Source: Haliotis rufescens
Lineage: Eukaryota
DNA length: 64,000 bases
Direction of reading: 5' to 3'
Assembly (NCBI RefSeq): GCF_023055435.1
Contig: NW_025963813.1
Span: 27,714,001-27,778,000, forward strand
This document shows positions 28,448 through 63,964 of the stretch, piece by piece (position 1 is the first letter of the stretch; every line of letters begins with the position of its first letter). Made by a program: the position numbers and the translations under genes. Under the pieces are notes generated by a model. That model saw only the letters and a program-made list of their open reading frames with translations, was not told where the DNA came from and did not search any database.

Positions 28448-29054
28448 ATGTGGAGTCAAGGTGTGTGTTTATTTCTGACCGTGGTTTGTGTCTCCGGACA
28501 AGCTGATCTAAGTAACAGTTTCACATTGGACCAACAACCATTGAATGAAACAGCATTGTTTGTGGCTGACGCTCTCTACAAGCATCCCAAATTGTTCCGA
28601 AAGTTGATTAACATCAGCTCTGAAATTGGGCCATTCATGTCATTGACCGATGACCCGAAAATATCAATCCTATTCGATCAAGTCCTTGATGCTCTTCCTG
28701 CGTTGCTGCGGTCACCCTACTTCATCAACGCCGTACGCGTCGTCGCAGATGAGCTGCACAGCGTCAACATTACCGACGTGTACGACTATCTCCAGATGAA
28801 CCATTATACCCCAGACGACATCGCAGCTAAACGGATGGTGAATGATGCTATCTTTGATAGGCTGGACAAGATGAGGACGCTTCAAAGACTCCTCACTCTT
28901 GGTAGTGCCCGGGACATCCTCCCCCTCAGCGTCAACGACAGTATCACGCCAGGATGCTACAGCGACATGATGAACTTCGTCGACGCAGTTGCCGGTATAC
29001 AGATTCCACCAAGGAAGGACTTGAATTACATCAAGACACCATGGGCACTGAGAA
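28448..29054 (+). CDS. Exon 1 ('1b') of secreted NRF-domain/EF-hand protein, copy 1
   Basis: Signal peptide MWSQGVCLFLTVVCVSG; ends ITPGCYSDMMNF...PWALR-A|gtaagt (phase 1), the start of the NRF domain. Confidence 0.88.
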
Positions 29055-29812
29055 GTAAGTAATCTCGCTGTCACTAGTCGAGGACAAGTTAGTACATTTT
29101 ACCTTGGACACTGAGAAGTAAGTAGTCTCGCTGTTACTAGTCGAGGACAAGTTAGTACATTGTTACCTTGGACACTGAGAAGTAAGTAGTCTCGCTGTCA
29201 CTAGTTGAAGACAAGTTAGTACATTGTTACTTTGAACACTGAGAAGTAAGTAGTCTCGCTGTAACTAGTCGAGGAGAAGTAAGTACATTGATTCCATGGA
29301 CACTGAGAATTAAGTAATCTCGCTGTTACTAGTTGAGGACAAGTTAGTACATTGTTACCTTGGACACTGAGAAGTAAGTAATCTCGCTGTTACTAGTTGA
29401 GGACAAGTTAGTACATTGTTACCTTGGACACTGAGAAGTAAGTAATCTCGCTGTTACTAGTTGAGGACAAGTTAGTACATTGTTACCTTGGACACTGAGA
29501 AGTAAGTAATCTCGATGTTACTAGTCGAGGGGAAGTAGTGAGTGAGTGAGTTTGGTTTTACGCCGCATTTAGCAATATTCCAGCAATATCACGGCGGGGG
29601 ACACCAGAAATGAGCTTCACACATTGTACCCATGTCGGGAATCGAACCCGGATCTTCGGCGTGACGAGCGGACGCTTTAACCACTAGGCTACCCGACGCC
29701 CCTCGATGAGAAGTAAGTACATTGTTACCTTGGACACTGAGAAGTAAGTAATCTCGCTGTTATTAGTCAAGGACAAGTAAGTACATTGTTGCCTTAGGCA
29801 CTGAGAAGTTGG
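29040..29812 (+). repeat. ~64-bp (dimeric) minisatellite starting at the exon-1 splice donor, about 10 copies, interrupted by a SINE
   Basis: Unit ccttggacactgagaagtaagtaatctcgctgttactagttgaggacaagttagtacattgtta. Confidence 0.93.
29538..29702 (-). mobile_element. SINE family A inserted in the intronic minisatellite
   Basis: Full head and tail; imperfect TSD tcgaggggaagta / tcgatgagaagta. Confidence 0.88.
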
Positions 29813-30463
29813 TATTCTCGCTCCTAATGAGTGTCAGGCAAGGAAATTGTTATTTCAGGTCCTCTTTTAATCACCGCGTTACTTATGAATGAAAAGTGAG
29901 AACTGGAATCATATTCCCTTGGGTTGTAAAAATTACATACTCATACAATGTAAGGAAGTAGGGCTTTGGACATGATACCTTGGGTCGTGAAAAGTAGGAC
30001 TTGGACCATGTTTCCTTGGGTCGTGAAAAGCGAGTAATTAATACCCGCCCTCTCATCGATATCAAGCGCCATTTGTTTTTACTCGAAAAAACACATTTTC
30101 GTCGATTCTGTCCTTTGCGTTACATATACTAGATTATGTCAAGAAAATACCCATCAAACCAGAGCAAAACTATTGGTCATGCCTGTCATATCCGCAATTG
30201 TAGCGTCCCTGTAGTACAATATGGGACTGCTTCAGATCTTCACACTCTTGTGTCCCCCGCCCGCAATTCATTGATTGTCCTAAGCCAAGTAAGAGGAGGA
30301 TGGGGTGGGTACAATGTGTGACCTGACGGATAATGTCATCGTACCCTGACGGCTTGGGTTGCTGATCATGCTCGCAATCACTGGTTTGTCTGACCCAGAC
30401 TGTATTATTTCAGGTCTGCAGTATAGAGCTGGAATATTTATTCAATCACTCACTAATTTTCAG

Positions 30464-30675
30464 TGCTGGACTCCTACGGCAAGCCGCCTAGTGGTATTTA
30501 CGAGGGAAATGTACACTGGCTGGGCGAACCGAAGGAATGTCGGAGCATACACGCGCAGTTGGCTCCTGGAGTTATCCTTGGTAACAAAACGCTAACCTCC
30601 CCTATCGACTTCAAAGGAAAGTACTGCCGGGCTGTGTTTCATCATATGCCTTGGGTTGCGGACATCTCTCAAATG
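30464..30675 (+). CDS. Exon 2 of NRF/EF-hand gene, copy 1
   Basis: ttttcag|TG...CAAATG|gtatgt; MLDSYGKPPSGIYEGNVHWLGEPKEC...GKYC, the core NRF-domain signature. Confidence 0.9.
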
Positions 30676-31199
30676 GTATGTCAACACTTTGAATGTACCG
30701 TGAAGCCTCGTTACTCTGGACATCACTACGTCCCCATCTGACCCGTGAAGATCCGGGATAGAATAGGTCTTCAGCAACCCATGCTTGCCGTAAAAGGCGA
30801 CTATGCTTGTCGTAAGAGGTGACTAATGAGGTCGGGTGGTCAGGCTCGCTGACTTGGTTGAGGCATGTCATCGTATCCTAATTGCGAGGATCGATGCTCA
30901 TGATGTCAATCACTAGTTTATTTACAGACCTGCGTTATATAGCAAGAATATTCTTGAGTGCAGGGTTACACAACTAACAAAAAAATATAACGTCCTCAGT
31001 TATCGTTTCCCTAGCCTATCTTAATCAACTGTCCATCTAGATTAACTAGGTTTCGCTATCTAGAGATATATACGTTATATCCTGAGACAATGGATTATAT
31101 ATTGGCCGAAATATGCATGCCTTGTTGAGTAGTGAGTGTTTTTATTTTCTTTAGTCAGCTAATTCAGCAACTCCACACTGCTTTGATCAGCTCTTACAG

Positions 31200-31545
31200 C
31201 ACACATGTCACAAATCAGGCGAGGTTAAACAACGTTGGTCTCGGAGAGCACTTGGATGGGAGACCGTGTTCGCCAGATTGACTCCTGGGACTTGCTAGGG
31301 CTTTGGTACTGCCCCACAGTGAAGCACACGCAGCACATGTTGTGTCTCCTAAAGCAAGTGACTCTGTTCCAATTATGCCTCTGTTCACCCAGCACTGAAT
31401 GGGTACCCAGAAGGATGAGATGGTAATGACTGGTAACCTTCCAGCGCCTCACATCCACCCTAATAATAATTATATAGCGCTTTATGCATGCCCTTGTGTA
31501 GTATGGTAGCGCAAAATATATAGAAGTAGCAGCAGCAGCAGCAGT
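31200..31545 (+). mobile_element. 5S rRNA-derived SINE-like element (second copy ~56290-56632)
   Basis: gaggttaa(a/g)caacgttggtctcggagagcacttggatgggagaccg resembles the 5S internal control region; followed by a CORE-like body (gcaagtgact...cacccagcactgaatgggtacc) and a (CAG)n tail. Confidence 0.65.
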
Positions 31546-31601
31546 AACCTTCTCGCATATTTGGAGTCTCTGATCCGTGTGTTACCTTTATGTATACGTT
31601 C

Positions 31602-31880
31602 GGGGGCACGGGTGGCCCAGTCGTCTAAAACGCCGCGATTCGCTGTGCAGAGTTGCGTCCCTTTTGCACACCAGAAACCTATGATTGTGGGTTCGAATCC
31701 CGATTCGCCCCGATTATGTTTCTAGGTTGGTCAGAACCATACACGTGCTCGTGGGTTTCACCGAAGTGGTAAACGTCTGAGACCTGCATCACTTCGGGCC
31801 TTCCTCCCACATTAAGCTGACACGCCGTGATATAACTGGAATACTGTTAAAAGCGGCGTTAAACCCAACTCACTCACACT
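31602..31880 (+). mobile_element. SINE family B (full length)
   Basis: Head, body and tail match other copies (also 39286-39483-, 40737-41000-, 46649-46892-, 56686-56970+). Confidence 0.88.
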
Positions 31881-32071
31881 CCTATGCATACATGCTGCAT
31901 TTGAACCAAATACTAGTACACAACCAGGCAGCATATTTCTGCAGATTTGGCACTGTCAGATTTCCACCTTGAGGCATATGATTGGGTGACGCAATCATTT
32001 AGACATGAAGTATTGCTGAAGCCCCATTCTCATGATTCCACTCCGGGTTCAATTCTCTACTTTCTTTCCAG

Positions 32072-32147
32072 GATGACACAGTGACGTGGGGCGTGTGTGT
32101 CCCCGATACGTGTAGCGAGCAGGACGTGGAAGAAATGTTCCAATTAG
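32072..32147 (+). CDS. Exon 3 of NRF/EF-hand gene, copy 1
   Basis: tttctttccag|GAT...TTAG|gtaggt; DDTVTWGVCVPDTCSEQDVEEMFQL (NRF GxCxPxxCS motif). Confidence 0.9.
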
Positions 32148-33330
32148 GTAGGTGCCGTTACCGAATACCATAAAGCGGCGGGGTTAGGGGTAGCCATCGA
32201 TCGATCACTCCAGGCGCTGTTTAAATCCCGAGCAAAACTTAAGGAACTGCCTCCGTGGTGGAGTGGAGAGAGCGTCTGCCCAGTCGGTGGTTCGAACCCG
32301 GTATCGTCAAACCAAAAAAACGTTAAAAGACGGTACTTATTGTTTCTTTGCCTGGCGTTCGGCAGTAAGGGGTTAAAACAAGAACTGGTGAGGTCGGTTT
32401 CTGAGTGGGGTATCCATGTTTAAAGTGCGGCATGGGATCTCATTAGGCTAGCACAATAAAACTGGCATTAGTCTGGACGCGCACACACGTGCATGCACGT
32501 TGCAAAATAAGTACCACCTTGAACGCTACGTTTGACCCCATTTCCCCTCGCCTACATTAGGAGCTATTCTTTGCGTCACTGTTTTATACACCTATGTCTT
32601 AACAAGTTGTAATTGAACTGGTGTCGTGTGCAGACAGGGAATTAAATTGTGACGTATTTAGATCACGAAGTACCGAAGGTTTTTTAGTCTCTGGTTGTCA
32701 CTCGAAGCTTCAAGGAAACATCCCTGGAGTCACAGCGTTGAAGGGGCGTTACCATGGTCCTGCAGAAAACATGGGTTTCACCAAAGTGGTAAACGTCTGA
32801 GACTGCATCACTTCGGGCTTTCCTCCCACAATAAGCTGACACTCTGTGGTTTAACTTGAATACGGTTTAAAACAGCGTTAAACCAAAGTCACTCACTTTC
32901 GAAACATGAACTGTCAGCTGTGAATTCTTGGAAACACCATCGTTGTCTGATGGTCTATACAGTTTAGAATAGCCCCCTGCTCCCATTGGAACGATTTGGA
33001 GTGACTTTTTTCGTGGGGGATTTTCTTTCACTCTTTTTCGGCCAATGAAATATCTTAAAACCAAAAGAGATGTCTTAGTAACTCACGTTTCACCTGATCC
33101 TCTGACCTAGGTTGCTTATTACACAACTATTTGAAAACATGATGTGCACGTGTTGGATCATGTCCACTGGCATACACCAAACTGTAGCTAGACTTTGAGT
33201 TGCAACGCATTGAGTTGAAGGGTCCTATGCTGGAATAGGCCAAGACGTTTTAATAAAATACGTGAGGCATTGTCGCTGTGCTGTGAAAGTGATTATTAAA
33301 TTCTTTCCTTTCTTTGTTAACGCCGCGCTC

Positions 33331-33575
33331 GACCCGTGAAGATCCGGGGTAGAATTGGTCTTCAGCAACCCATGCTTGTCGTAAGAGGCGACTAACGGGA
33401 TCGGATGGTCAGGCTCGCTGACTTGGTTGATGCATGCCATCGATCCCAATTGCGTGGATCGATGCTCATGATATCAATCACTGGATTGTCTGGTCCAGAC
33501 TGGATTATTTACAGACCGCCGTCATATAGCTGGAATATTGCTGAGTGCGGCGTTAAACAACAAACCAAAGAAAAC
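33331..33575 (+). mobile_element. SINE-like element, family C, full length, nested in an oppositely oriented family C copy
   Basis: 13-bp TSD taacgccgcgctc at 33318-33330 and 33576-33588. Many other copies, e.g. 27680-27867-, 30740-30980+, 34073-34330+, 35720-36010+, 36775-36961-, 44180-44438-, 55830-56070+, 59095-59358-, 61333-61570+, 61830-62050+. Confidence 0.9.
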
Positions 33576-33937
33576 TAACGCCGCGCTCAGTACTATTCCA
33601 GCAATATGACGGCGGTCTGTAAATAAACGAGTCTGGACCAGACAACCTAGTGAGCATGACATGACATGAGCATAAACCAAGTCAGCGAACCTGACAATTC
33701 TATCCAGTTAGTCGCCTCATTAGTTGTTGAAGACCTATTCTATCCAACTCATAAGACAGGTTTAAAATGATTTAAATGAAACTTGTTAGGTCTGCAATTT
33801 GACCATGCCTATAGTGCAAGTCACTGTCTGTTTTAGATACATTATCGGTTATGAAGATACTAATCGAGGTAACGTACTAATTATTAATAAAACAAATCCT
33901 GTGTGCAGCATGTAGGCTTGGATTTATGATATTGCAG

Positions 33938-34049
33938 GTTTCATGAAGAATTTCCAGACGACTCCCGATAATGTCTCATGTTCAGACATCCAGGAACCTA
34001 CTGGTCATGTGCCCGTCACGCCCCGGACTCCCCCCACCGGTCCCCCCAC
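33938..34049 (+). CDS. Exon 4 of NRF/EF-hand gene, copy 1 (end of NRF domain plus Pro/Thr linker)
   Basis: attgcag|GT...CCCAC|gtgagt (phase 1 to 2); GFMKNFQTTPDNVSCSDIQEPTGHVPVTPRTPPTGPP. Confidence 0.82.
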
Positions 34050-36079
34050 GTGAGTACATCCCATCCCAGATGCGACCCTTGAAGATTCGGGGTAGAAAGG
34101 GTCTTCAGCAACCCATGCTTGCCGTAAAAGGCCACTTTGCTTATCGTAAGAGGCGACTAATTGGATCGGGTGGTCGGGCTCGCTGAGTTGGTTGATGCAT
34201 GTCATCAATCCCAATTCCGTGGATCGATGCTCATGATGTCAATCACAAGATTGTCTGGTACAGACTCTAATATTTACAGACCGCCGTCATAAAGCTGGAA
34301 TATTGCTGAGTGCGGCGTGAAAAAACAAACGCATAAGCGAGTGTATCATTTCTACATTTCAACTATACTTGAACCGTTCACCCGTGACGAAATGTGTTAG
34401 AGTAGGTCTTCAGCAACCCATGTTTCTTAGAGGCGACTAACGGGATTGGTGACGGGATTGGGGGGTGGGTGGGTGGGTGGGTGAGGCTCGCTGACCTGGT
34501 TGATGAATGTCATCGTGTCCCAACTGAGTTGATCGAAACTCCTGTCAATCAGTGGATTATCTGGTCCGGTTCAGAATCGATTATTTACAGACTGCCACCA
34601 AATAGCTGGAATAATGAGCACCGAGTGCGGCGTTTTACAACAATCTTGACCCGTTCTCCAAAACGAACTTAACGCTGCTATTATCGCATCTTCCCGAGGC
34701 AAGGATGTTAGCTGACTATAAAGTCCAATTTCCACCTTTGCCGAACTGCCATGGGCTTGAATTTCCGAGTTATATTTTTACTAGCCTACCGATAGCGAGT
34801 GTATGCATATTCCAGTCAAAATCGCGTATCGGAATAGACATCCGATTCGTAAACATGGCAACTTCCAAGCAGATTAAGCTCGATTGCAGTATTTCAGTGC
34901 AAAGCATGTGCACCGCCACCTTAGTTCAACAGTCCTAATCTTTCATGTTTGATCAAATTGCCCATGTGATTTGATGCACTTCGTGGAGTAAGACCGCTTT
35001 ATATAGATCTTCATCATCGATCACATTGCATTGCCTTGGCGCTGCCACTTGGTTTGAAACAAATGCAAGTGATATGAAAGGTGGAATCTGATTGGTCAAT
35101 ATGAGACGCAACTGGTAAAAGTAGCCAAATTCGACAAGGGTGGAAATTTATGAAGGTCGCATCTCGAAGATCGTTGATTAAATGGTGTCCAGCTGAGAAT
35201 GTGTTTAGTTTAACGCCGACCTCGGCAATATTCCTGCTATAAGTAGGTCTTCAGCAACCCATACTTGCCGTAAAAGGCGACTGTGCTTGTCATAAGAGGC
35301 GACCAACGGGATCGGGTGGTCGGGCAAGGTGACTTGGCTGGTGCATGTTATCGATCCCAATTGCGTGGATCGAGGCTCATGATGTCTCCAGTCTCGATTA
35401 TTTACAGACCGCCGTCATATAGCTAGAATATTTTGCTGAGTGCGGCGTTAAATAACCAAACATTCCGCCACCCCTCAATTAAGCATAGGTTGCTGGGAAT
35501 CATGTTCCCGAGGCAAGAACGTCAAATAGCCTATTTATCAAAGTCTACATCTACCCTTGCCACATCAAGCCCACTTCCCTTTGCTTAATATGGTAATAGC
35601 ACATATCAACAGTCAAATCAAGGAACGTTTCACCATCCGAAAACATGGACGTGAAGACAAGTATTTTCCAAGTCTGTCCAAGTTTTATATCGACACTCCC
35701 AAGTACTGTACTTGTAAGCGACCCGTGAAGATCCGGGGTGGAATAGGTCTTCAGCAACCCATGCTTGTAAGAGGCGACTATCGGGATCGGGTTGTCAGGG
35801 TCGCTAACTTGGTTGATACATGTCATCGATCCCAATTGCGTGGATCGAGGCTCATGTCAATCACTGGATTGTCTGGACCAGGCAAGATCAGGCTCGCTGA
35901 CTTGATGCATGTTATCCCAATTGGCCGATGTTTATTCAAATCACTGGATTATCTGATCCAGAATATATTATTTACAGACCACCGTCATATGGCTGAGTGC
36001 GGCGTAAAACACGCTAGTATGCTGGCCGCAATACCTTATGCGTGGTACGATGAAATGTACATATAATTGTCACTTGCAG

Positions 36080-36204
36080 CACTACATTTTCCAAGCGTCC
36101 CAGTGTTGCAGCGAACTCCCTTTTCACATCGTGTTCCGACTGCAAAGATCGAATCAAGCCAGACGAATGGATGAACTGTTTCTTCTCCAGTTTTGACACC
36201 GACA
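36080..36204 (+). CDS. Exon 5 of NRF/EF-hand gene, copy 1
   Basis: cacttgcag|C...GACA|gtgagt (phase 2 to 1); TTTFSKRPSVAANSLFTSCSDCKDRIKPDEWMNCFFSSFDTD. Confidence 0.82.
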
Positions 36205-37215
36205 GTGAGTACATGTAGTTATCTCCCTTGACAGTAACAAGCTCCTGACAGCGATCCATCATTGCCTGACCCCTTTACGAAGAACGGATAGGCACTGCTC
36301 TGGAAACAAACTGATGTGTGTAATTAATTTATCTCCCCCTGTCCTTGATTCATGACGAATAGTCGACCTTGAACACTAGGGTCATATCTCTGCAGGATAA
36401 TACACCATTTAATATTCCGCTTCCATATTCGAATGACACAACGCTACAAATAGCCGTCCAATCGCCATGTTGGGTTCCTCCCGTCTTTGTAGCCAGGAAG
36501 ACAGTCTCTTAATTCGATGGCCCGCCCGTAAAAGGACGTGAATTTCAATGACTTTTAGATTAATGCCGAGGATTGGATATCCAAAACGTCCGCAATAAAC
36601 AACTCGTAATTGACAACTTACATCGTTACAGATAAAAGCGACGTTACATGCAATATGGATTGAAAGCAGCTCTGTTTCAAATCTGAGCACAAGTCACTTA
36701 TAGCTGTCAATATTGTTGCCTGTTCACCTCAAACTCAGTTATCCGCCCCTTTCCCCCAAAATTATGTACCAACTAGTTGGTTGTTAAACGCCGCACTGAG
36801 CAATATCCCAGCTGTATGACGGCGGTCTGTAAATGATCGAGTCTGGACCAGGCAATCCAGTGGTTGACATCATGAGCATCTGACCGTCCGATCCCGTTAG
36901 TCGCCTGTTGCGGCAAGCATGGGTTGCTAAAGACCTATTCTACTCCGGGTCTTCACGGGTCCAACCTCTGATAAAAGTGTTATCGTCTTAACGCTACGGA
37001 ACGGAGCTTTGAACTTCGTAAACTTGATATTAAGAGTCCCCCAATGCAAAGAATAACCTCAAGAAGGACTGTGATCTGAAATGGACATCAACTCAGACTA
37101 TGTTGGAACGAGGTAATGAATGATGTCAGCTTCAATTATTTGCGACAATGCTTTCATATGGACCTTCTTGTTGGTTTAAAATACTAACAATGTACCTGAA
37201 GATGTACTTTTTCAG

Positions 37216-37386
37216 AAAATGGCAACATCAGCAAGCGTGAATGGTGGTCCGAGAGCCACAAGCTGGGGCTGGACACGACTGACCAGGGCCAGATAGCGCG
37301 AGCCTTCATCGAGCTGGACATCAACAAGGACCTCCAGATAGACGCACCTGACCTCAAGTATCTCTTTGCCTTCTTTGACGACAACG
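37216..37386 (+). CDS. Exon 6 of NRF/EF-hand gene, copy 1 (EF-hands)
   Basis: tttttcag|AA...AACG|gtgagg (phase 1 to 1); KNGNISKREWW...FIELDINKDLQIDAPDLKYLFAFFDDN. Confidence 0.87.
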
Positions 37387-37532
37387 GTGAGGTCACCGCT
37401 TTGAATTGTTAAGGCTATGCAATTCTCATGTGGCGGTGGCGCCGCGATTCGCGTCCCTTGTGCACGCCAGAAACCTATGATTGTGGGTTCGAATCCCGGT
37501 TTGCCCCGATTGTTTCTAAGCACCATACCTGT

Positions 37533-38026
37533 CATCTTCCCGAGGCAAGGGAGGTAACTGACTATAAAAGTCCAGTTTCCATCCTTGCCGAACAAGGCTG
37601 GTATTATGGAGTTACGTTTTTGCTCGACTAACGAGTCTATGCATAGTCCAATCGAAATCCGGTTCGAAAACTGTCGTCCAGATTTCGATTGATTGCAGGA
37701 TTTGCAAAACATGTGCACCGCCAACTCCTTGTCAACAGATATTTTTCATGTTTTTTTAACTCACGTGATGCATTTCGCGATGTAAGACCCGTTATATCAC
37801 AATATAGATCTTGATTATCCATCAGATCGTCCTGACTGGGCGCTGCTATTTTGTGTGAAGCAAACGATACGATAGGTGGAATCTGATTGGTCCATAGATG
37901 CATAGAAGGGACATAACTAGTAATAGCCACTGGTGGCGCTACGATCGAGGCCAGTAATTCCAGCCTAGTTCGGCAAGGGTGGAAACTGGACTTTTACAGT
38001 CAGTTAACTCTTGCCTCGGCAAGATG
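37533..38026. mobile_element. MITE with ~70-bp TIRs and 9-bp TSD (Mutator-like), inserted into a SINE B
   Basis: catcttcccgaggcaagg... / ...ttgcctcggcaagatg; TSD catacctgt / catacccgt; partial copies ~34688-35148 and ~60708-61160. Confidence 0.85.
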
Positions 38027-38634
38027 CATACCCGTGGGTTTCACCGAAGTAGTAAACGTCTAAAACCTGCATCACTTCGGCCTTTCCTCCCACGAAATGT
38101 GCTGGGACAAACATTCGAGAAACATTTCGCCCGAACACATATCCCTAACAAATGAGTCACGTTCGACTTGATCACCTGTCCACCCCGGTTACATCTTTCT
38201 CGTGGCCCTGTCGAGACTGGTACTGAGTTGCAGAGAATGTTTGTGAGCTGGCTTCTCATTTGCAACATCTATGACACTAACTGATGAGGATGGGAACATG
38301 ACAAACGTCCACCTGTGAAAGCCGACATGCCTTATCGTCATTGCTGTGAATTTATGGATGTCAACTTCTTTATTATCAACACAACGTTTCGCAGTATATG
38401 CTTACTCCTCACGGGTTGTTAGTTATGCAAAAGTTGCCTATTTTCCTACCTGGAGTCTTCAGTCGTGACATAAAACCGTATGTAGGACGTGTTTTTTAGA
38501 TCGAAATGCTAATGTAAAACCTGTCCCAATATTGGCTGCGCCCAACGGAGAATTATATGCTCCTCGAAAGTTGTGTTTATAGAAGCTGGCTGCATACTCC
38601 TCTCCAGTACTGTACAATTTCGGTTTCTTTTCAG

Positions 38635-38693
38635 GAGATGGGTTTGTCAACCTCCAGGAGTTCAGCTACAACTGGCAGTCTGTCGTCTCGTAG
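38635..38693 (+). CDS. Terminal exon 7 of NRF/EF-hand gene, copy 1
   Basis: tttcttttcag|GA GAT GGG...TAG; GDGFVNLQEFSYNWQSVVS*; AATAAA at 38731-38736. Confidence 0.87.
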
Positions 38694-41161
38694 ACTTCAA
38701 TCACATCACCTGTCAAGATACCACACTGTTAATAAACGCCGTTTAACGCTTGTAATTTGCCTGGTCCATGTTGAACACCTGACTTTCACAATCCCTCAGC
38801 ACATGTAGTTTGGCAAATTAACCTTGATCGATGTTCATGAAATCAATCACTGGAATGTCTGGTCCAGACCGCCGTCATATAGCTGGAATATTGCTGAGTG
38901 CGGAGTTAAACAACAAATAATGAAATGACTTACACACAGTTGCCAGATGTTTCCAAAAACATTCTGGTTATCCTCATCGCCAATACGCCCCTCTTTCTCC
39001 AGAAGCCATGAAAGGGTGATCTACAAAGACTCCCAGGCATCAGAAGTGAAAATATACTCATAAAGCTCGCATCAATTCTGGAACAAGCTGCCGTTTGGTT
39101 TTCAGTTATTAATGACATCAATGGGAAATGAGTGAGTTGGGTTTACGCCGCTTTTAGCAATATTCCACCAATGTCACGGCGGGGGGACACCAGAAATGGG
39201 CCTTCCCACATTGTACCCATGTGACGAGCAATCGCTTCATCCACAAGGCTACCCACCGCCAGTGTGAATGTTATTGCAGTACCTGTGGGTTGGGTTTAAC
39301 ACCGCTTTTAACGATATTCCAGGTGTATCACGGCATGTCAGCTTAGTGTGGTAGGAAAGCTCGAAGTGATGCAGGTCTTGACAAACCTAGAAACATAATT
39401 GGGGCGAACCCACAATCATAGGTTTCTGGCGTGCCCAACTCTGCACAGCGAATCGCGGCGCCTTAGACGACTGGGCCACCCGTAGTACCGGTGAAGGGAT
39501 ATTCAGTGAAATGAAGCGTACACAAACCTTTACCATACTTTTCATCTCAGGAAACTTTTACCTCAAAAAGACAACCACCTAAGCGCATATTATGTCATCT
39601 GAAAGTCTTTTTTGATGGCACAAAAACCGTTAGCATGCACACGTAACCAGCAAATGTCAATCAGAATCCAACATATACGGGTTCTACCACATGCTACTGT
39701 AGGTCTCGCGAACACAGGGAAAGACGGCTCCAACGCTGTCCCGTATATCTGCAGCTGCTGTGACGTCATGGTCGTGCTTTATTTGTGTTTGGTTTGTGAA
39801 GTTACCACACTTCGGCTCAGTGGAATTCTGGGAAGGAAAGAGAAGTTACATGGGGATGACTAATACTTGGAGTGATGTAAACAAACTATCTTTGTACATT
39901 TTTTCAAAACATTCCTAACTATAAATTATTCCACTAAACATGTTTCTGTTACTCAGGCACAATCATAGAAGGGAGACACGCTCTGCCCTGGCTCCCGTTC
40001 CCGTTCCACAAAGCCATCGTAAGCCCATGTTAATGTGTGGGAGTTACGATCACCTTAGCGCTAACAACGCCGTGTGGAACAGGGCCCTGGACTGGTGTAC
40101 CTGCCCTTATGTGCTTCAGCTCCTCGCATGCAGCCGCTAGCGGTGCTGTCTGTCGAGAGGGGCGGGAACAGGCCTGCAGCCTACCACTATAGGGGAAACG
40201 TTAACCCATTTCCATGGAGCGAGTTCTGCCTGTCGGGAGGGACAGGGGCAGCACTACAGCATATCGCTATGCGGGAAACCTTGACCCATTTCTGTGGAAG
40301 AGGTATTAGCACTTTTGGACAGCGTGAACATCCGACTGTCGGGCTACAGGAGTAAACATTAACATTACGGAGGTAACTCTCAGAAGTATGGTTAAAACGT
40401 ACAACATTGTTGGTTTCAATTTTAAACAACATCTGCATGTCTCCACTGATCGATCTACTTCATTATAAAATAATATTACACAATCTAGCTATAACTTTAA
40501 AAAGATAAATCATGAAAAAATATTAATAACTCTACCACTTTAGATATACACCATTGTCAACAGTACCATGCATAAGACTATGGTTGTGTCAACGTAATAC
40601 CCCTTGTTCCTAGCAAACAATCAATGTTTCAGGAAGTCATCGTTGTGAAAACGTAAGTTTTGATTCCATAATCTTTTTTTCTACAACAAACATTTAAACT
40701 GAAATATGTAATTTTCATATTCTCATTCCCGATCCTGAGTGAGTTAGTTGGGTTTAACGCCTCGTTTAACGCCGCTTTTAACAGTATTCCAGTTATATCG
40801 CGGCATGTCGTCTTAATGTGGGAGAAAAGCCCGAAGTGATGCAGGTCTCAGACGTTTACCACTTCGGTGAAACCCACGAGCACGGGAAGGGTGCTGACAA
40901 ACATAGAAACATAATCGGGGCGAACCGGGAATCTAACCCACAATCATAGGTTTCTGGCGTGCCCAAGGGACGCAACTCTGCACAGCGAATCGCGGCGCCT
41001 GAGACAACATGACGGTACCAGATGCAAATTACAATTCTGGGTTACACGTGTTCATAATGATAGTATAGGTACTTGCACCATCAGGAAGGTATGCTACAAA
41101 ATGTCTTTGCGCCGTGTTGATCCTATGGATCAAAGCTATCTTTCTTACCTTCTGTGAAATA

Positions 41162-43045: not shown

Positions 43046-43250
43046 AATTTAAAAACAATTGTACAAAAACCTATGATTTCAGCATTTATCTAACTACGTA
43101 TACAAAAGGCGTTTTTAATTATTTTTTTTATATGTTTGTTTTATCAGGGCAAATAGCGGTGGTTTGTAGAATACTTATGGCAGCCATATTGGACACCTTT
43201 TGTAAACGTAAATGCTGACATCATAGGTTTTTGTACAATTGATTTAAACT
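43046..43250. mobile_element. Small MITE-like inverted-repeat element
   Basis: tttaaaaacaattgtacaaaaacctatgatttcagcattta / taaatgctgacatcataggtttttgtacaattgatttaaa. Confidence 0.7.
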
Positions 43251-44675: not shown

Positions 44676-44759
44676 GCATATATCCGTCGTAGCACATCCT
44701 TTATTGACGGCGTTATACCTATGTATCCCATGTGACATACAATAGGCCTTCACATATCT

Positions 44760-50282: not shown

Positions 50283-50901
50283 ATGATTCGCTACACATTA
50301 TTCGCTGTTATGGTGGTCGTGTTTCTGTCATATGTTTCCGGGCAAACCGACTTGGCACACAGTTACACCCCGGACAAACAACCTCTGAATGAGACGGCGT
50401 TGTTTGTGGCAGACGCTTTATATAAACACCCAGTTCTTTTCCGTAAACTTCTCAAGATCGGCGCTGCTGCTAAGCCGTTGTTGAAGCTAGGGGGAAATGA
50501 CCCCAAACTTGGCATGTTTTGGAACTTTGTTCTGGATATGTTACCAGGACTGCTGCAGTCGCCGGAAACCGCCAGCATCCTGGAAATCCTGGCCGACGAA
50601 CTCCACCGAGTCAACATCACTGATGTGTATGGCTTTCTCCAAGCTCATAACATGACCCAAGACAACCCACAGGCAAAGCAGATGGTGAGCGGCGCCATTT
50701 GGAAAAGATTCGATAAACTCCGAACTGTCCGGAGAATCCTGACCGGCAATTCTGCTCGTCATTTTCTTCCCATGACCAGCAACGACACCATCACCGATGT
50801 CTGCTACAACGACATGATGAACTTCATGGACGCCATGATCAGCGCTCAAATACCACCCAGAGACGCCCTTAACTACACCTTCATTCCCTGGGCGCTGAAC
50901 A
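50283..50901 (+). CDS. Paralogous intact exon 1 ('1a'); likely first exon of NRF/EF-hand gene, copy 2
   Basis: Signal peptide MIRYTLFAVMVVVFLSYVSG; shares QPLNETALFVADALYKHP, ADELH.VNITDVY, CY.DMMNF, QIPPR..LNY...PWAL with exon 1b; ends AAC A|gtaagt (phase 1). Confidence 0.85.
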
Positions 50902-50933
50902 GTAAGTATACATTCTCCCGTGATCCCAGATCA

Positions 50934-54475: not shown

Positions 54476-54800
54476 ATGTGGAGTCAAGGTGTGTGTTTAT
54501 TTCTGTCGGTGGTTTGTGTCTCCGGACAAGCTGATCTAAGTAACAGTTTCACGTTGGACCAACAACCATTGAATGAAACAGCATTGTTTGTGGCTGACGC
54601 TCTCTACAAGCATCCCAAATTGTTCCGAAAGTTGATTAACATCAGCTCTGAAATTGGGCCATTCATGTCATGAATGTCAGAAGTAAGATGAGGACGCTTC
54701 AAAGACTCCTCACTCTTGGTAGTGCCCGGGACATCCTCCCCCTCAGCGTCAACGACAGTATCACGCCAGGATGCTACAGCGACATGATGATGGCCTTCGT
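54476..54800 (+). pseudogene. Destroyed copy of exon 1b
   Basis: Nearly identical start to 28448 but stop at 54671-54673, an internal deletion, and loss of the exon end, splice donor and intronic minisatellite; ~180 bp upstream (28231-28410 equivalent) also absent. Confidence 0.88.
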
Positions 54801-55553: not shown

Positions 55554-55765
55554 TGCTGGACTCCTACGGCAAGCCGCCTAGTGGTATTTTCGAGGGAAAT
55601 GTACACTGGCTGGGCGAACCGAAGGAATGTCGGAGCATACACGCGCAGTTGGCTCCTGGAGTTATCCTTGGTAACAAAACGCTTACCTCCCCTATCGACT
55701 TCAAAGGAAAATACTGCCGGGCTGTGTTTCATCATCTGCCTTTGGTTGCGGACATCTCTCAAATG
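55554..55765 (+). CDS. Exon 2 of NRF/EF-hand gene, copy 2
   Basis: 212 bp, intact frame and splice sites. Confidence 0.8.
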
Positions 55766-57167
55766 GTATGTCAACACTTTGAATGTAACGTGAAGCCTCG
55801 TTACTCTGGACATCATTACGTCCCCATTTGACCCGTGAAGATCCGGGAAGAACAGATCTTCAGCAACCCATGCTTGCCGTAAAAGGCGACTATGCTTGTC
55901 GTAAGAGGCGACTAATGGGGTTGGGTGGTCAGGCTCGCTGACTTGGTTGATGCATATCATCGTATACTAATTGCGAGGATCGATGCTCATGATGTCAATC
56001 ACTAGTTTATTTACAGACCTGCGTTATATAGCTAGAATATTCTTGAGTGCAGCGTTAAACAACTAACAAAAAATATAACGTCCACAGTTATCGTTTTCCC
56101 AAGCCTATCTTAACCAACTGACCATCTAGATTAACGAGGTTTCGCTATCTAGAGATATATACGTTATATCCTGAGACAATGGATTATATATTGGTCGAAA
56201 TATGCATGCCTTGTTGAGAAGTGAGTGTTTTTATTTTCTTTAGTCAGCTAATTCAGCAACTCCACGCTTCTTTGATCAGCTCTTACAGGACACAGGTCAC
56301 AAATCAGGCGAGGTTAAGCAACGTTGGTCTCGGAGAGCACTTGGATGGGAGACCGTGTTCGCCAGATTGACTCCTGGGACTTGCTAGGGATTTGGTACTG
56401 CCCCACAGTGAAGCACACGCAGCACATGTTGTGTGTCCTTAACGCAAGTGACTCTGTTCCAATCATGCCTCTGTTCATCCAGCACTGAATGGGTACCCAG
56501 AAGGATGAGATGGTAATGACGGTAAACCTTCCAGCGCCTCACATCCACCGTAATAAAAATTATATAGCGCTTTCTGCATGCCTTGTGTAGTATGATAGCG
56601 CAATATATATAGGAGTAGCAGCAGCAGCAGTAGCTCTCTCGCATATTTGGAGTCTCTGATCCGTGTGTTACCTTTATGTATACTTTCGGGGGCACGGGTG
56701 GCCAAGTCGTCTAAGGCGCCGCGATTCGCAGTGAAGAGTTGCGTCCCTTGGACATGCAAGAAACCTATGATTGTAGGTTCGAATCCTTGTTCGCCCCGAT
56801 TATGTTTCTAGGTTTGTCAGCACCATACCCGTGCTCGTGGGTTTCACCGAAGTGGTAAACGTCTGAAACCTGCATCACTTGGGTCTTTCCTCCCACATTA
56901 AGCTGACACGCCGTAATATAACTGGACTACTATTAAAAGCGGCGTTAAACAAAACTCACTCACTCACTCAATTATGTATACTTTCCTGTAAACAAATTCA
57001 AGACTGGAATGTTTTGCTGGGAACATCTAGGAATTCACTACAAAAGCATGATTCGTTTATCCGGACATTTGTTAATCCGGACGATTTCATCTTGAACGGC
57101 AAAGTAGGATAAAAGAACGTTCACTGTATTTCATCAGTCATGTGAGGTATATAACCTGATGGATCTA

Positions 57168-58663
57168 AACTGAGGGCCAAAAGAAACGTTACCAACATTA
57201 ACTGATTTGCCACTTTGAAAGAAAGATGCCAACCTGTTCAAAGAACACATCTCACGAATACAGCCTTCATGTTCTCTTTCGTTCTTTGGACGTGCTTTGC
57301 GGATTTTGGGAGATATTGGTGTTTTTCAGCAATTTTTTAAAACCTTCTTTCCAAAATTATCGTGCAATTTGCGGGTATAAATTACGCACGGATCTGTTCC
57401 CTATCATTGGTTGCGATGATTAACACCAACGAACATGCCAAGACTGACCGCTGTCCAGAGGGAGAGAGCCATAGGTATGCTGCAGATGGGAGCGACACAG
57501 AGAGAGGTTGCCATTTAACATGAACTGCTCCAAGATGACCATTACCAGACTGATCGCACGTCTCCGACAGACTGGCAGAACCGCAGACAGACCACGGAGT
57601 GGCAGACCAAAGGTCACGACCCCGCAGGATGACGCCTTTTTACGGGTCCTTCATCTGAGGAACAGATTTCTTACTGTGATGTCATCAGCTGCCAACAGCT
57701 TAGGACATCCGGTCAGCAGGCAAACAGTGACCAGACGACTACGACATTATGGCCTCCGGGCTTATCGCCCTTTCAAGGGCATGACCTTGACCCGTCAAAA
57801 TCGACGTGCCAGATTGACTTGGTGCAGGCAAACTCAGCGATGGCAACAAAGGGAATGACGGCGAGTGTTGTTTAGTGACGAGAGCAGGTTCCAACTCTTA
57901 ATACCTTCGGACGCGAGTTTATCGACGACGTGGTGAACGTACGGCTCCTTGTTGTGTCCAGGAGGTGGAACCGTACGGGGACGGAAGTGTGATGGTCTGG
58001 GGCGGCATTTGCGGGGACGAGAAGACGGAACTTGTCATCATCGAAGGCAATCTGACAGCACAACGCTACATTGACAATATCTTACGGCCAGTGGTTCTTC
58101 CTTTCATCCAGCGTCAACAACGGACGGTGTTCCAACAAGATAACGCCACACCCCATAAAGCCCGTATTACAAGTGACTTCCTCAACGCCAACAACGTGAC
58201 TGTCCTGCCGTGGCCAGCTCAATCACCAGATCTGTCACCCATAGAACATCTCTGGGACGTCGTCTTCGGAAACGTCAACATCCTCCCTTCACGAGACAAG
58301 CGTTGATCGTTGCCCTCCTTGAGGAATGGAATCGGATACCTGCATGAGACGCTTGTCTACTCAGTTCGACGCCGCATTCGAAGATGCATTGCCGCTCATG
58401 GAGGTCATATCCCGTATTGAACGGTCTGGGCCGTCGTCACCTTAAAGTTGTAACCAATGTTGTTGATCGAATATTGGACGAATGATCCCTTGTCAAGAAA
58501 TGTCCTTGAAGGAGGTCAAGGACTTTGTTGTTGAATTAGTAAACGGATTTTACTGTTCTGAATGATGGATTTCTACAATACAATTGTTATTGCTGCTTCT
58601 AATTGTGTTGGTCATATTCTATCCTAGAAATATCGTTGGTAACGTTTCTTTTGGCCGTCAGTT
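57168..58663 (+). mobile_element. Tc1/mariner transposon (same family as 12750-14259), disrupted, in intron 2 of copy 2
   Basis: TIRs aactgagggccaaaagaaacgttaccaac / gttggtaacgtttcttttggccgtcagtt, TA flanks; transposase with stop at 57856-57858 and frameshifts. Confidence 0.93.
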
Positions 58664-59840
58664 TATGTCAAATATTCATCAAATCATAACAAAACCGTAT
58701 AAGCTTAAGTCAGGGCTGTTGATTAACACCACTAACACAATGGTGTATGTTCTCGTATCTGTTCCAAGAGATGAACATGATTAACAGTTTGGTTGTAACA
58801 CAAAGTGTTTATTGAAATACATAAATCTGCTTCACTTTACGTTGTTATGAGGCAGAGCCGGTACAGAGTGCTGACTCGACAGATATGAAAACCATCACGC
58901 CTCTGTTATATAACAAGAAGGGAAATCAATATTCCAGACTCCCACTCCCGACCTGCTACAATTGCAGATACACGGTATGTTAGGTTGTTCTTTTAACAGA
59001 TCCCTTCCTTGATTGTTTTTATGCCCAATCCTAATATTTAATATTTTTATGAATTATTTTCTGATGGTCGACATTTCTATTTCAAAATTTATGCTTGTTT
59101 GTTTGTTTGTTGTTTAACGCCGCACTCAGCGATATTCCATCTATATGACGGTGATCTGTAAATAATCGAATCTGGACCAGACAATCCAGTGATTGACATC
59201 ATGAGCATCAATCCACGCAGTTGGGGTACGATGCAGCATCAACCAAGTCAGCGAGCCTGACTATGCGACCCCGTTAGTCTCCTCTTACGACAAGCATAGT
59301 CGCTTTTTACGACAAGCATGGGTAGCTGAAGATAGATTCTCACCCGAACCTTCACGGATCGATTAACAGGATTGGGTGGTCAGACTCGCTGACTTGACGT
59401 ATGGTCAGGCTCATTTAAGCCCTGCATCACTTCGGGCTTTCCACCGACATCAAGCTGACACGCCGTGATATAACTGGAATACTGTTAAAAGTGGCGTTAA
59501 ACCCAACTCTCACACCCCTATGCATACATGCTGCATTTGAACCAAATACTAGTATACAACCAGGCAGCATATTTCTGCAGGTGTCAAAGTGACGAGATAT
59601 TCAGTGATAACATCCAACGTCTCGTCCTCAGAAGGTCGTTCCATTAGCTAACAAGTTGATGGCTTAGATTTTCTGGGATTCCCCCCAACCTTGGCAGGGA
59701 GTTCATTCACCAGATTTGGCACTGTCAGATTTCCACCTTGAGGCATGTGATTGGGTGACGCAATCATTTAGACATGAAGTATTGCTGAAGCCCCATTCTC
59801 ATGATTCCACTCCGGGTTCAATTCTCTACTTTCTTTCCAG

Positions 59841-59916
59841 GATGACACAGTGACGTGGGGCGTGTGTGTCCCCGATACGTGTAGCGAGCAGGACGTGGAA
59901 GAAATGTTCCAATTAG
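59841..59916 (+). CDS. Exon 3 of NRF/EF-hand gene, copy 2
   Basis: Identical to 32072-32147 including splice sites. Confidence 0.8.
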
Positions 59917-60292
59917 GTAGGTGGCGTTACCGAATACCATAAAGCGGCGGGGTTAGGGGTAGCCATCGATCGATCACTCCAGGCGCTGTTTAAATCCCGA
60001 GCAAAACTTAAGGTACCGCCTCCGTGGTGGAGTGGAGAGAGCGTCTGCCCAGTCGGTGGTTCGACCCCCGGTATCGTCAATTAATTAAATGAAGTCAGTG
60101 TACATACTGAAATAACTCATAAGACAGGTTTAAAATGATTTGAATGAAACTTGTTAGGTCTCAAACATTATCGGTTCTGAAAACCTGTTTTGTACAATTG
60201 ACGTTATGAAGATACTAATCGAGGTAACGTAGTATTTATTAATAAAACAAATCCTATGTGCAGCATGTAGGCTTGGATTTATTATTTTGCAG

Positions 60293-60404
60293 GTTTCATG
60301 AAGAATTTCCAGACGACTCCCGATAATGTCTCATGTTCAGACATCCAGGAACCTACTGGTCATGTGCCCGTCACGCCCCGGACTCCCACGACCGGTCCCC
60401 CCAC
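60293..60404 (+). CDS. Exon 4 of NRF/EF-hand gene, copy 2
   Basis: 112 bp, frame and splice sites kept (PPT changed to PTT). Confidence 0.75.
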
Positions 60405-62683: not shown

Positions 62684-62808
62684 CACTACATTTTCCAGTC
62701 GTCCCAGTGTTGCAGCGAACTCCCTTTTCACATCGTGTTCCGACTGCAAAGATCGAATCAAGCCAGACGAATGGATGAACTGTTTCTTCTCCAGTTTTGA
62801 CACCGACA
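62684..62808 (+). CDS. Exon 5 of NRF/EF-hand gene, copy 2
   Basis: 125 bp, frame and splice sites kept (K to S). Confidence 0.75.
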
Positions 62809-63793
62809 GTGAGTACATGTAGTTATCTGCCTTGACAGTAACAAGCTCCTAACAGCGATACATTATTGCCTGGCCCCTTTACGAAGAACGGATAGGCACT
62901 GCTCTGGAAACAAACTGATGTGTGTAATTAATTTATCTCCCCCTGTCCTTGATTCATGACGAATAGTCGACCTTGAACACTAGGATCATATCTCTGCAGG
63001 ATAATACACCATTTAATATTCCGCTACCATATTCGAATGACAACGCTACAAATAGCCGTCCAATCGCCATGTTGGGTTACTCCCGTCTTTGTAGCCAGGA
63101 AGACATATTTTCCAGCTTCATTTTAAACAGTCTCTTAATTCGATGGCCCGCCCGTAAGAGGACGTGAATTTCAATGTAGATTAATGCCGAGGATTGGATA
63201 TCCAAAACGTCCGCAATAAACATCTCGTAATTGACAGCTAACATCGTTACAGATAAAAGCGAAGTTACATGCAATATGGATTGAAAGCAGCTATGTTTCA
63301 AATCTGAGCACAAGTCACTTATAGCTGTCAATATTGTTGCCTGTTCACCTCAAACTCAGTTATCCGCCCCTTTCCCCAAAAATTATGTACTATCTAGTTG
63401 GTTGTTTAACGCCGCACTGACCATTATTCCAGCTGTATGACGGCGGTCTGTAAATGATCAAGTCTGGACCAGGCAATCCAGTGATTGACATCCAATGGGT
63501 TGCTGAAGACCTATTCTACTCCGAGTCTTCACGGGTCCAACCTGTGATAAAAGTGTTATCGTCTTAACGCTACGGAACGGAGCTTTGAACTTCGTAAACT
63601 TGATATTAAGAGTCCCCAATGCAAAGAATAACCTCATGAAGGACTGTGATCTGAAATGGACATCAACTCAGACTATTGTTGGAACGAGGTAATGAATGAT
63701 GTCAGCTTCAATTATTTGCGACAATGCGTTCATATGGACCTTCTTGTTGGTTTAAAAAAAACTAACAATGTACCTAAAGATTTACTTTTTCAG

Positions 63794-63964
63794 AAAATGG
63801 CAACATCAGCAAGCGTGAATGGTGGTCCGAGAGCCACAAGCTGGGGCTGGACACGACTGACCAGGGCCAGATAGCGCGAGCCTTCATCCAGCTGGACATC
63901 AACAAGGACCTCCAGATAGACGCACCTGACCTCAAGTATCTCTTCGCCTTCTCTGACGACAACG
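63794..63964 (+). CDS. Exon 6 of NRF/EF-hand gene, copy 2 (weakened donor; exon 7 would lie beyond the window)
   Basis: 171 bp open frame (E to Q, F to S); donor gtgagg changed to gtttga by a 12-bp deletion. Confidence 0.65.

What the first reader, a model, noticed from the sequence alone, without database searches (positions are those of the whole stretch)
28448..38693. Hidden 7-exon gene fusing an NRF-6 N-terminal domain to a secreted EF-hand module
Seen in sequence: exons 28448-29054, 30464-30675, 32072-32147, 33938-34049, 36080-36204, 37216-37386 and 38635-38693 all have GT-AG boundaries with compatible phases (1,0,1,2,1,1). They sum to 1362 nt, an open frame of 453 aa plus stop, followed by AATAAA. 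The protein is: signal peptide, ~150-aa helical region, Cys-rich NRF domain (C...WALRMLDSYGKPPSG..EGN.HWLG...EC...GKYC...GVCVPDTCS...VSC), Pro/Thr linker (EPTGHVPVTPRTPPTGPPTTT), then EF-hand loops DTDKNGNISKRE, DINKDLQIDAPD and DDNGDGFVNLQE, plus a degenerate Cys-containing first loop. Two of these loops are assembled across splice junctions, which strongly supports the exon 5-6-7 joins. Established knowledge: NRF domains normally precede a multi-pass acyltransferase-3 domain (NRF-6/NDG-4 family). Inference: here that membrane domain is replaced by a Ca2+-binding module resembling secreted molluscan EF-hand proteins, giving a soluble extracellular protein (possible roles in mucus, shell matrix or lipid transport). 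I do not know this architecture from elsewhere. The apparent breakpoint lies inside exon 4.
Basis: partly seen in the sequence, partly recalled or inferred. Interest (0 to 1): 0.9.

Follow-up and report, generated by a model that had tools for sequence, protein, structure and literature searches.

The report
Abalone chimeric NRF–EF-hand secreted gene
This is a real, spliced abalone gene, built by exon shuffling, that joins the outer (NRF) domain of a membrane acyltransferase to a small secreted calcium-binding module; RefSeq already lists it as an uncharacterised protein, so it is a tidy lineage-specific chimera and not a hidden gene.

Summary
The seven-exon model is correct to the residue. 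Its 453-aa product is identical to RefSeq XP_048250330.1 (uncharacterized LOC124152475, Haliotis rufescens). Intron-less public contigs from four studies join exons 3-4-5-6 at the predicted GT..AG sites.

Pfam on the identical database protein gives NRF (E 1e-20) plus an EF-hand pair above the curated cut-offs. There is no transmembrane segment beyond the signal peptide.

The gene is not unique. A 94-98% identical tandem twin lies in the window and a decayed third copy lies upstream. Orthologues exist in H. cracherodii, H. asinina and H. rubra. I found none outside Haliotis.

Origin:
- Exons 1-4 come from an NRF + acyltransferase-3 gene ("O-acyltransferase like") about 320 kb away on the same chromosome.
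- Exons 5-7 match, end to end and with identical intron phases and positions, a family of small secreted EF-hand proteins (e.g. "calmodulin-like protein 5", 157 aa).
- Both source introns are phase 2, so the junction most likely lies in intron 4, not inside exon 4.

Function is inferred only: a soluble extracellular, Ca2+-binding NRF protein. The scan holds no earlier follow-up of this locus.

The parts
28448..29054 (+). Exon 1 (from the ATG): signal peptide, helical region and start of the NRF domain.
   Evidence: The donor is GTAAGT. Homologous to exon 1 of the NRF + AT3 parent-type gene (57% aa identity).
29038..29530 (+). 64-bp tandem repeat (7.7 copies). It starts in the last 17 nt of exon 1 and repeats the donor-site sequence into intron 1.
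30464..30675 (+). Exon 2: core of the NRF domain.
   Evidence: Pfam NRF E 2.3e-9 on this exon alone. Splice sites.
32072..32147 (+). Exon 3: end of the NRF domain.
   Evidence: Pfam NRF E 6.6e-6. The joint to exon 4 is seen in four runs.
33938..34049 (+). Exon 4: last NRF-region cysteine (VSC) and the Pro/Thr linker. It is the last exon of parent-gene origin.
   Evidence: Same phases (1 in, 2 out) as exon 4 of the parent gene, which there precedes the first transmembrane helix. Joint 34049>36080 in three runs.
36080..36204 (+). Exon 5: start of the EF-hand module, holding the atypical first loop and the first three residues of canonical loop 1.
   Evidence: 125 nt, phase 2 in and 1 out, like the 128-nt exon of the stand-alone EF-hand gene P0027. 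Joints.
37216..37386 (+). Exon 6: symmetric phase 1-1 exon that runs from loop residue 4 of one canonical EF loop to residue 3 of the next.
   Evidence: The matching 168-nt exon of the P0027 gene has the same borders. There are only three copies in the genome.
38635..38693 (+). Exon 7 (coding part): rest of the last EF loop, exit helix and stop codon.
   Evidence: The contigs run on about 46-55 nt past the stop.
38731..38736 (+). AATAAA polyadenylation signal.
50283..50897 (+). Tandem twin (LOC124129262), first exon now in use. It was recently captured from the 5' end of the parent acyltransferase gene.
   Evidence: 96% identical to residues 1-215 of P0001. DNA 96-97% identical to C35:27393837-27396448, inverted.
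54476..54789 (+). Tandem twin: remnant of its original exon 1, with an internal deletion.
   Evidence: 98-100% aa identity to residues 1-65 and 141-175 of exon 1. The deletion shows in the DNA comparison.
55554..63964 (+). Tandem twin, exons 2-6: 55554-55765, 59841-59916, 60293-60404, 62684-62808 and 63794-63964. Exon 7 lies just past the end of the window.
   Evidence: There are 12 substitutions in the 738 aligned exon bases compared, against about 5-6% divergence in the introns.

Best explanation
Shown:
- This is a real protein-coding gene of the red abalone, LOC124152475. It encodes a 453-aa protein made of a signal peptide, a helical region of about 150 aa, a six-cysteine NRF domain, a Pro/Thr linker and a C-terminal EF-hand module of about 108 aa. 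It has no membrane-spanning part.
- Exons 1-4 are homologous to the first four exons of a neighbouring NRF + acyltransferase-3 gene, named 'O-acyltransferase like'.
- Exons 5-7 are homologous to the three EF-hand exons of a family of small secreted EF-hand proteins.

Inferred, strongly:
- The gene is a chimera made by exon shuffling, because the two source introns are both phase 2. Recombination within introns would then have given an in-frame fusion. In it the ten-helix acyltransferase body was swapped for a calcium-binding tail.
- The fusion predates the split of H. asinina from the North Pacific abalones. It was later copied in tandem.

Inferred, about 35% sure on function:
- The protein is secreted, glycosylated and disulfide-bonded.
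- Its NRF part keeps whatever ligand or acceptor binding the ectodomain of the parent enzyme has, but it cannot transfer acyl groups.
- Its EF module binds Ca2+ through two canonical loops and possibly two atypical ones.
- It would then act as a Ca2+-dependent soluble binder or adaptor in a calcium-rich extracellular setting such as extrapallial fluid, shell matrix or mucus.
For: Gene model:
- Frame and splice sites check out.
- The product is identical to RefSeq XP_048250330.1.
- Spliced contigs carry the joints 3-4, 4-5 and 5-6.
- There is no retrocopy in the genome.

Domains:
- Pfam gives NRF plus EF-hand families above their cut-offs.
- Two loops fit PROSITE PS00018, no hydropathy window exceeds 1.6, and there are seven N-x-S/T sites.

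Constraint:
- Orthologues with intact frames exist in four species. The EF loops DxDKNGNISKRE and DINKDLQIDAxD are invariant in the three species aligned (H. rufescens, H. asinina, H. rubra).
- Between the tandem copies the exons differ by 1.6% and the introns by about 5-6%.

Parent gene:
- P0002/P0022 (NRF + Acyl_transf_3) is 66% identical to P0001, the product of the tandem twin (copy 2), over residues 1-324.
- Its gene lies at C35:27367689-27395201, about 320 kb away.
- The phases of its exon 4 match those of exon 4 here.

EF-hand donor family:
- P0027 aligns with residues 323-453 to both C-termini (30% identity, E 4e-12).
- It has identical intron positions and phases.
- Paralogues share the same central exon.

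No acyltransferase exons lie downstream in the window.
Against: - The runs are only guessed to be RNA, and the contigs cannot be assigned to copy 1 rather than its twin.
- No tissue or protein-level evidence was available.
- AlphaFold models of the EF module had low confidence (pLDDT under 45), so neither the number nor the pairing of working EF-hands is settled.
- The stand-alone EF family is only 30% identical, so it marks the donor family, not the donor gene.
- The last third of exon 4 cannot be aligned with the parent, so a breakpoint inside exon 4 is not strictly excluded.
- The searches for this architecture outside Haliotis were limited by word matching and by the length window.
Confidence: 0.8

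Rival explanations
1. The protein stays in the lumen of the ER or Golgi. There it works as a Ca2+-dependent partner or regulator of the membrane NRF-acyltransferases, or of cargo handling, in the manner of small luminal EF-hand proteins. It would not be a secreted matrix or mucus protein.
For: The parent enzymes act at the luminal or extracytosolic face (PMC12423673). The protein has a signal peptide and sequons but no direct evidence of export.
Against: It has no KDEL/HDEL-type C-terminus; it ends in QSVVS. Its EF module belongs to a family of small proteins that carry their own signal peptide. The published abalone EF-hand protein with the same loop spacing is described as a secreted shell-matrix protein (PMC10741955).
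Confidence: 0.2
2. This is a transcribed but functionless evolutionary accident: a chimeric gene drifting toward pseudogene status.
For: One of the three tandem copies is already decayed, with no exon 5 or exon 7. dN/dS between the two good copies is 0.54 on only 12 changes, which says little.
Against: Frames are intact in four species, with the EF loops and all six NRF-region cysteines conserved. The EF module is 70% identical between H. rufescens and H. asinina, against 52% with indels in the linker. Exons are conserved about three times better than introns between the copies.
Confidence: 0.07
3. The EF-hand exons are an alternative 3' end of a longer gene whose main product still carries the acyltransferase-3 domain, or the model joins two separate genes.
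For: NRF domains normally precede that membrane domain. The neighbouring twin has two RefSeq isoforms.
Against: tblastn of the full NRF + AT3 protein finds only N-terminal and NRF exons in the window. A poly(A) signal lies 38 nt after the stop, and the contigs end about 50 nt after it. The next gene downstream is the tandem twin with the same exon order. Single contigs span exons 3 to 6.
Confidence: 0.03

Closest known systems
NRF-6 / NDG-4 (C. elegans), Drop-dead (Drosophila) and 'O-acyltransferase like' proteins. The nearest is the Haliotis gene at C35:27367689-27395201 (P0002 = XP_067659498.1, P0022 = XP_046579997.1).
   Same: Signal peptide, mollusc-type helical N-terminal region, an NRF domain with all six cysteines, and the same four 5' exons with the same phases. 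P0001, the product of the tandem twin, is 66% identical to P0002 over residues 1-324.
   Different: It lacks the whole acyltransferase-3 ten-helix domain, so it cannot pass acyl groups across a membrane. It is soluble and ends in an EF-hand module.
Small secreted EF-hand proteins of Haliotis: 'calmodulin-like protein 5' XP_046331982.2 (P0027, 157 aa) and its paralogues on contig C594.
   Same: The EF module aligns end to end (30% identity, E 4e-12). The order is the same: atypical loop, canonical loop, atypical loop, canonical loop. Introns sit at residue 4 of the canonical loops in phase 1, and a phase-2 intron lies in front of the module.
   Different: Those are stand-alone proteins with their own signal-peptide exon. 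Here that exon is replaced by four exons of an NRF gene. The module here has a conserved cysteine pair (C357, C369) that P0027 lacks.
Hdh-SMP5, a secreted EF-hand shell-matrix protein of Haliotis discus hannai (PMC10741955).
   Same: It is a small secreted protein. Its EF loops are reported at residues 36-48, 56-68 and 112-124, so they are spaced 20 and 56 residues apart. The matching loops here are spaced 21 and 57 residues apart (354, 375, 432). Expression is reported in the mantle.
   Different: The likeness is taken from the paper's description only. I had no SMP5 sequence to compare. Its H. rufescens accession (XP_046328359) is not P0027.
Acyltransferase-3 proteins fused to a soluble extracytosolic domain (OafB, OatA and CASD1, with SGNH domains).
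   Same: The idea that the soluble domain outside the membrane handles the acceptor (PMC12423673). That is the role presumed for the NRF domain.
   Different: The fold is different and there is no homology. Here the soluble domain has been cut loose from the enzyme.

Membership tests
NRF-6/NDG-4/OACYL family (NRF + acyltransferase-3) | N-terminal NRF domain (PF20146) behind a signal peptide | tested here: met
   Pfam NRF E 1e-20, 74.8 bits against cut-off 27. The N-terminus is hydrophobic.
NRF-6/NDG-4/OACYL family (NRF + acyltransferase-3) | C-terminal multi-pass Acyl_transf_3 domain (PF01757) | tested here: not met
   No Pfam hit. No 19-residue hydropathy window exceeds 1.6. There are no such exons in the window.
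EF-hand superfamily | Profile match above the curated cut-offs | tested here: met
   EF-hand_7 32.0 against 30; EF-hand_6 32.1 against 25; EF-hand_1 27.8 against 25.4.
EF-hand superfamily | 12-residue loops with canonical ligand positions | tested here: met
   Residues 375-387 and 432-444 fit PROSITE PS00018. The loops at 412 and about 354 are atypical.
EF-hand superfamily | Ca2+ binding | not testable with these tools
   Needs recombinant protein.
Small secreted EF-hand proteins of Haliotis (P0027 type) | Sequence similarity over the whole module | tested here: met
   BLASTP E 4e-12, residues 323-453 against 21-156. Alignment A3.
Small secreted EF-hand proteins of Haliotis (P0027 type) | Shared intron positions and phases | tested here: met
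   Phases 2, 1 and 1 at the same codons.
Small secreted EF-hand proteins of Haliotis (P0027 type) | Stand-alone protein of about 130-160 aa with its own signal-peptide exon | tested here: not met
   Here the module is the C-terminal third of a 453-aa protein.
SMP5 shell-matrix proteins | Sequence homology to Hdh-SMP5 / XP_046328359 | not tested
   No tool gave me that sequence. Only the loop spacing from PMC10741955 could be compared.

The most novel reading that the evidence does not exclude
The NRF ectodomain is a self-sufficient ligand-binding module. This chimera would then be a calcium-switched soluble carrier or adaptor for the still unknown acceptor of NRF-type acyltransferases, working in the abalone's shell-forming or mucus matrix. 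As a naturally soluble NRF protein, it would be the first easy handle for finding out what NRF domains bind.
Probability: 0.15. Interest if true: 0.65.

Novelty: new variant of a known kind. Interest (0 to 1): 0.45.

Why it matters
The function of the NRF domain is unknown in any animal, because it always sits on a ten-helix membrane enzyme. A natural, soluble, conserved NRF protein could be expressed and used to look for its ligand.

The locus is also an unusually complete case of exon shuffling. The parent gene, the donor family and the chimera all sit in one genome. Their intron phases match, and the tandem twin shows a second, recent capture of a first exon.

For abalone biology it adds a candidate extracellular calcium-binding protein. 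None of this is a surprise in kind, and the sequence itself is already public.

Tried and rejected
1. Joined protein. I joined the exons only inside scripts, to check the frame and to test identity with a database protein. I sent no joined translation of my own to any search tool. Exons were searched one at a time by reference. Whole-protein searches used the identical database protein P0016 by its id.

2. Whole-protein AlphaFold model. The mean pLDDT was 58. The helical and NRF parts were moderate and the EF part fell below 45. The VIA-align search of the PDB gave only generic helical hairpins with Z under 6, so nothing was learnt about the NRF fold.

3. AlphaFold model of the stand-alone relative P0027 with seven sequences. 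The pLDDT was 42. Only the secondary structure, a run of consecutive helix-loop-helix units, is usable.

4. ESM Atlas on residues 336-453. It returned only generic EF-hand clusters below 0.9.

5. PDB sequence search. The best match was mitrocomin at E 1e-4, and calmodulin lobes scored about 0.005-0.04. No specific family emerged.

6. dN/dS between the tandem copies. With only 12 changes it is uninformative.

So I had no DNA of the H. asinina orthologue, no between-species dN/dS and no check of synteny.

8. Paper searches for the LOC numbers and for NRF together with EF-hand or abalone found nothing relevant.

10. The reading as an alternative 3' end or a gene misjoin was considered and rejected.
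Full report
**Observation.**
- Exon 1 opens with ATG at 28448 and ends before GTAAGT at 29055.
- A script confirmed that all seven stated exons have AG/GT borders, that the phases fit, and that the sum is 1362 nt. The product is one open frame of 453 codons ending in TAG at 38693.
- AATAAA follows at 38731.
- Two canonical EF loops are each split by a phase-1 intron after their third residue (DTD|KNG..., DDN|GDG...).
- On single exons Pfam finds NRF in exon 2 (E 2.3e-9) and exon 3 (6.6e-6), and only a weak EF-hand in exon 6.

**Transcripts.**
- Runs guessed to be RNA hold about a tenth of the sampled words of 33900-38750, roughly the exonic share.
- I laid four runs from four studies on 32060-38059. 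Single contigs of 1343-1406 nt carry the joints 32147>33938, 34049>36080 and 36204>37216, all GT..AG. Run X5 lacks a listed 4>5 joint but shows 3>4 and 5>6.
- The letters upstream and downstream of the laid pieces fit exons 1-3 (about 890 of the expected 895 nt) and exon 7 plus about 50 nt of UTR.
- One 765-nt contig reads through the exon 6 donor into intron 6.
- Exon 6 occurs only three times in the 1.33-Gb assembly, each time with introns around it. The intron-less form is therefore not a retrocopy.
- Caveat: the twin gene differs at 34033/34035, 36094/36095, 37311, 37367 and 37375. The contigs show a mosaic of these letters. They prove the joins for the gene pair, not for copy 1 alone.

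**Identity.**
- phmmer with exon 1 against 1.84 billion representatives gave P0001 (452 aa) and P0002 (889 aa).
- A word-based search with P0001 returned P0016, 'uncharacterized protein LOC124152475 [Haliotis rufescens]', 453 aa. Its accession is XP_048250330.1.
- Its contig length, 41,214,950, equals that of the window's contig C35. The window is therefore from the red abalone reference assembly, and the gene is already annotated, though unnamed.
- On P0016, Pfam gives NRF at residues 196-295 (E 1e-20) and EF-hand_7, EF-hand_6 and EF-hand_1 above their cut-offs at 365-445.
- No 19-residue hydropathy window exceeds 1.6, and the highest is the N-terminal signal sequence. There are seven N-x-S/T sites. 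There are eleven cysteines: two in the signal peptide, six in the N-terminal/NRF part and three in the EF part. Two loops fit PROSITE PS00018.

**Family.**
- Copy 2: the window holds a second copy with exons 2-6 at 55554-63964 (95-100% aa identity). Its exon 7 lies just beyond the window end.
- The two units are collinear over about 26 kb at 94-98% DNA identity.
- Copy 0: a third copy upstream of the window (C35:27692041-27706509) lacks exons 5 and 7 and looks decayed.
- Orthologues with the same Pfam content are annotated in H. cracherodii (454 aa), H. asinina (446 aa) and H. rubra (a partial model of 274 aa).
- A profile search found no other protein with NRF plus EF-hand. The next hits are ordinary arthropod NRF-6-like acyltransferases.
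- In the alignment of three species (H. rufescens, H. asinina, H. rubra), DxDKNGNISKRE and DINKDLQIDAxD are invariant. Against H. asinina the EF module is 70% identical, while the linker is 52% identical with indels.
- Between the tandem copies the exons differ by 12 of the 738 aligned bases compared, and the introns by about 5-6%.

**Origin of the 5' half.**
- P0002 is 'O-acyltransferase like protein-like' of H. asinina and has NRF plus Acyl_transf_3.
- It is 66% identical to the tandem twin's product P0001 up to ...VSCSDIQEPT, and unrelated after that point.
- Its red-abalone counterpart lies on the minus strand at C35:27367689-27395201, about 320 kb from this gene.
- In H. rubra and H. asinina the two genes also share a contig.
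- The parent's exon 4 is 91 nt. It encodes GVMKGRGIVPHTVTCFEERDLTKDTSGLVAA, enters in phase 1 and leaves in phase 2. The next exon starts the first membrane helix.
- Exon 4 here is 112 nt and has the same two phases.

**Origin of the 3' half.**
- A faint profile hit on contig C594 (E 4.7) led to an exon with the same borders as exon 6.
- Searching with its open frame gave P0027, 'calmodulin-like protein 5 [H. rufescens]', 157 aa. It consists of a signal peptide, a short Pro/Thr/Asn stretch and an EF module.
- P0016 residues 323-453 align with P0027 residues 21-156 right to both C-termini (30% identity, E 4e-12; alignment A3).
- The exon structure of the P0027 gene matches exons 5 (125 nt) and 6 (171 nt) here:

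| P0027 exon | Length | Phase in | Phase out | Last residues |
|---|---|---|---|---|
| Signal-peptide exon | not measured | not determined | 2 | |
| Next exon | 128 nt | 2 | 1 | ...DIN\|G |
| Next exon | 168 nt | 1 | 1 | ...DRN\|G |

- Three further paralogues on C594 share the central exon.
- Both source introns are phase 2, so one recombination between introns gives an in-frame chimera. This puts the junction in intron 4 rather than inside exon 4. The unalignable last third of exon 4 leaves a small doubt.

**The EF module.**
- Loops start at about residues 354 (atypical), 375 (canonical), 412 (atypical, DINKDLQIDAPD) and 432 (canonical).
- They are spaced 21, 37 and 20 residues apart, so neighbouring loops share a helix.
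- The module reads as two repeats of about 57 aa, the length of exon 6.
- Calmodulin lobes align with 370-429, pairing the loops at 375 and 412.
- Both AlphaFold attempts gave low confidence for this part.
- The published secreted abalone protein Hdh-SMP5 (134 aa) has loops at 36-48, 56-68 and 112-124, the same spacing (PMC10741955). I could not obtain its sequence, and its red-abalone accession differs from P0027. This is a lead, not a test.

**Mechanism.**
- Acyltransferase-3 proteins pass an acyl group through a ten-helix pore to an acceptor outside the cytosol. Animal members carry an N-terminal NRF domain of unknown role (PMC12423673; PMC12799122).
- This protein keeps that outer domain and loses the pore, so it cannot be an acyltransferase.
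- The most likely reading is a soluble secretory-pathway protein that pairs the binding surface of the NRF domain with Ca2+ binding.
- I put about 35% on an extracellular matrix, shell or mucus role and about 20% on a luminal role. Loss of function or a model artefact is unlikely.

**Verdict.** However, the gene is neither hidden nor unique, and the breakpoint is better placed in intron 4. It is a new variant built from two known families, of moderate interest.

Noticed in passing
window 1891-22635: A cluster of at least five intron-less sulfatase reading frames (Sulfatase + SGSH_C) on both strands: 4018-5685 (-), 17554-19182 (+), 21118-22635 (-), plus the split or partial frames 1891-2874 and 9409-11034. 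The cluster sits between the decayed third NRF-EF copy and this gene.
   Followed up: partly
window 42529-52205: About 10 kb upstream of the tandem twin, including the first exon it now uses (50283-50897), is an inverted copy (90-96% identical) of the 5' flank, exon 1 and start of intron 1 of the parent acyltransferase gene (C35:27393082-27403808). The twin's own exon 1 survives only as a deleted remnant at 54476-54789. This looks like a recent capture of a first exon, not the retention of two old alternative first exons.
   Followed up: partly
window 26695-27599 and 29038-29530: A 31-bp satellite of 29 copies lies upstream of the gene, and a 64-bp repeat of 7.7 copies lies in intron 1. Both contain a near copy of the exon 1 donor junction (GGGCACTGAGAA|GTAAGT). 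The same satellite lies upstream of the twin (52836-53796). Neither its origin nor any effect on splicing is known.
   Followed up: no
G000:C35:27692041-27706509 (upstream of the window): A third tandem NRF-EF copy. Its exon 1 matches only to residue 182, one exon-4 fragment is inverted, and no exon 5 or exon 7 was found. It is probably a pseudogene.
   Followed up: partly
window 37387-37452: One 765-nt contig (run X2) reads through the exon 6 donor into intron 6, with a 12-nt deletion and twin-type letters. It is probably an unspliced transcript of the twin gene.
   Followed up: no
window 32660-32860, 33260-33660 and 37460-37660: Intronic repeats are covered by hundreds of contigs at very high summed depth in all four runs. 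These are abundant repeat families that are transcribed or present as DNA in those libraries.
   Followed up: no
L007-L010 (G000:C594:48538492-48570730 and C594:4451388-4451561): A small family of stand-alone secreted EF-hand genes. Three lie within 32 kb and all share the same phase 1-1 central exon. One of them may be the published SMP5.
   Followed up: partly
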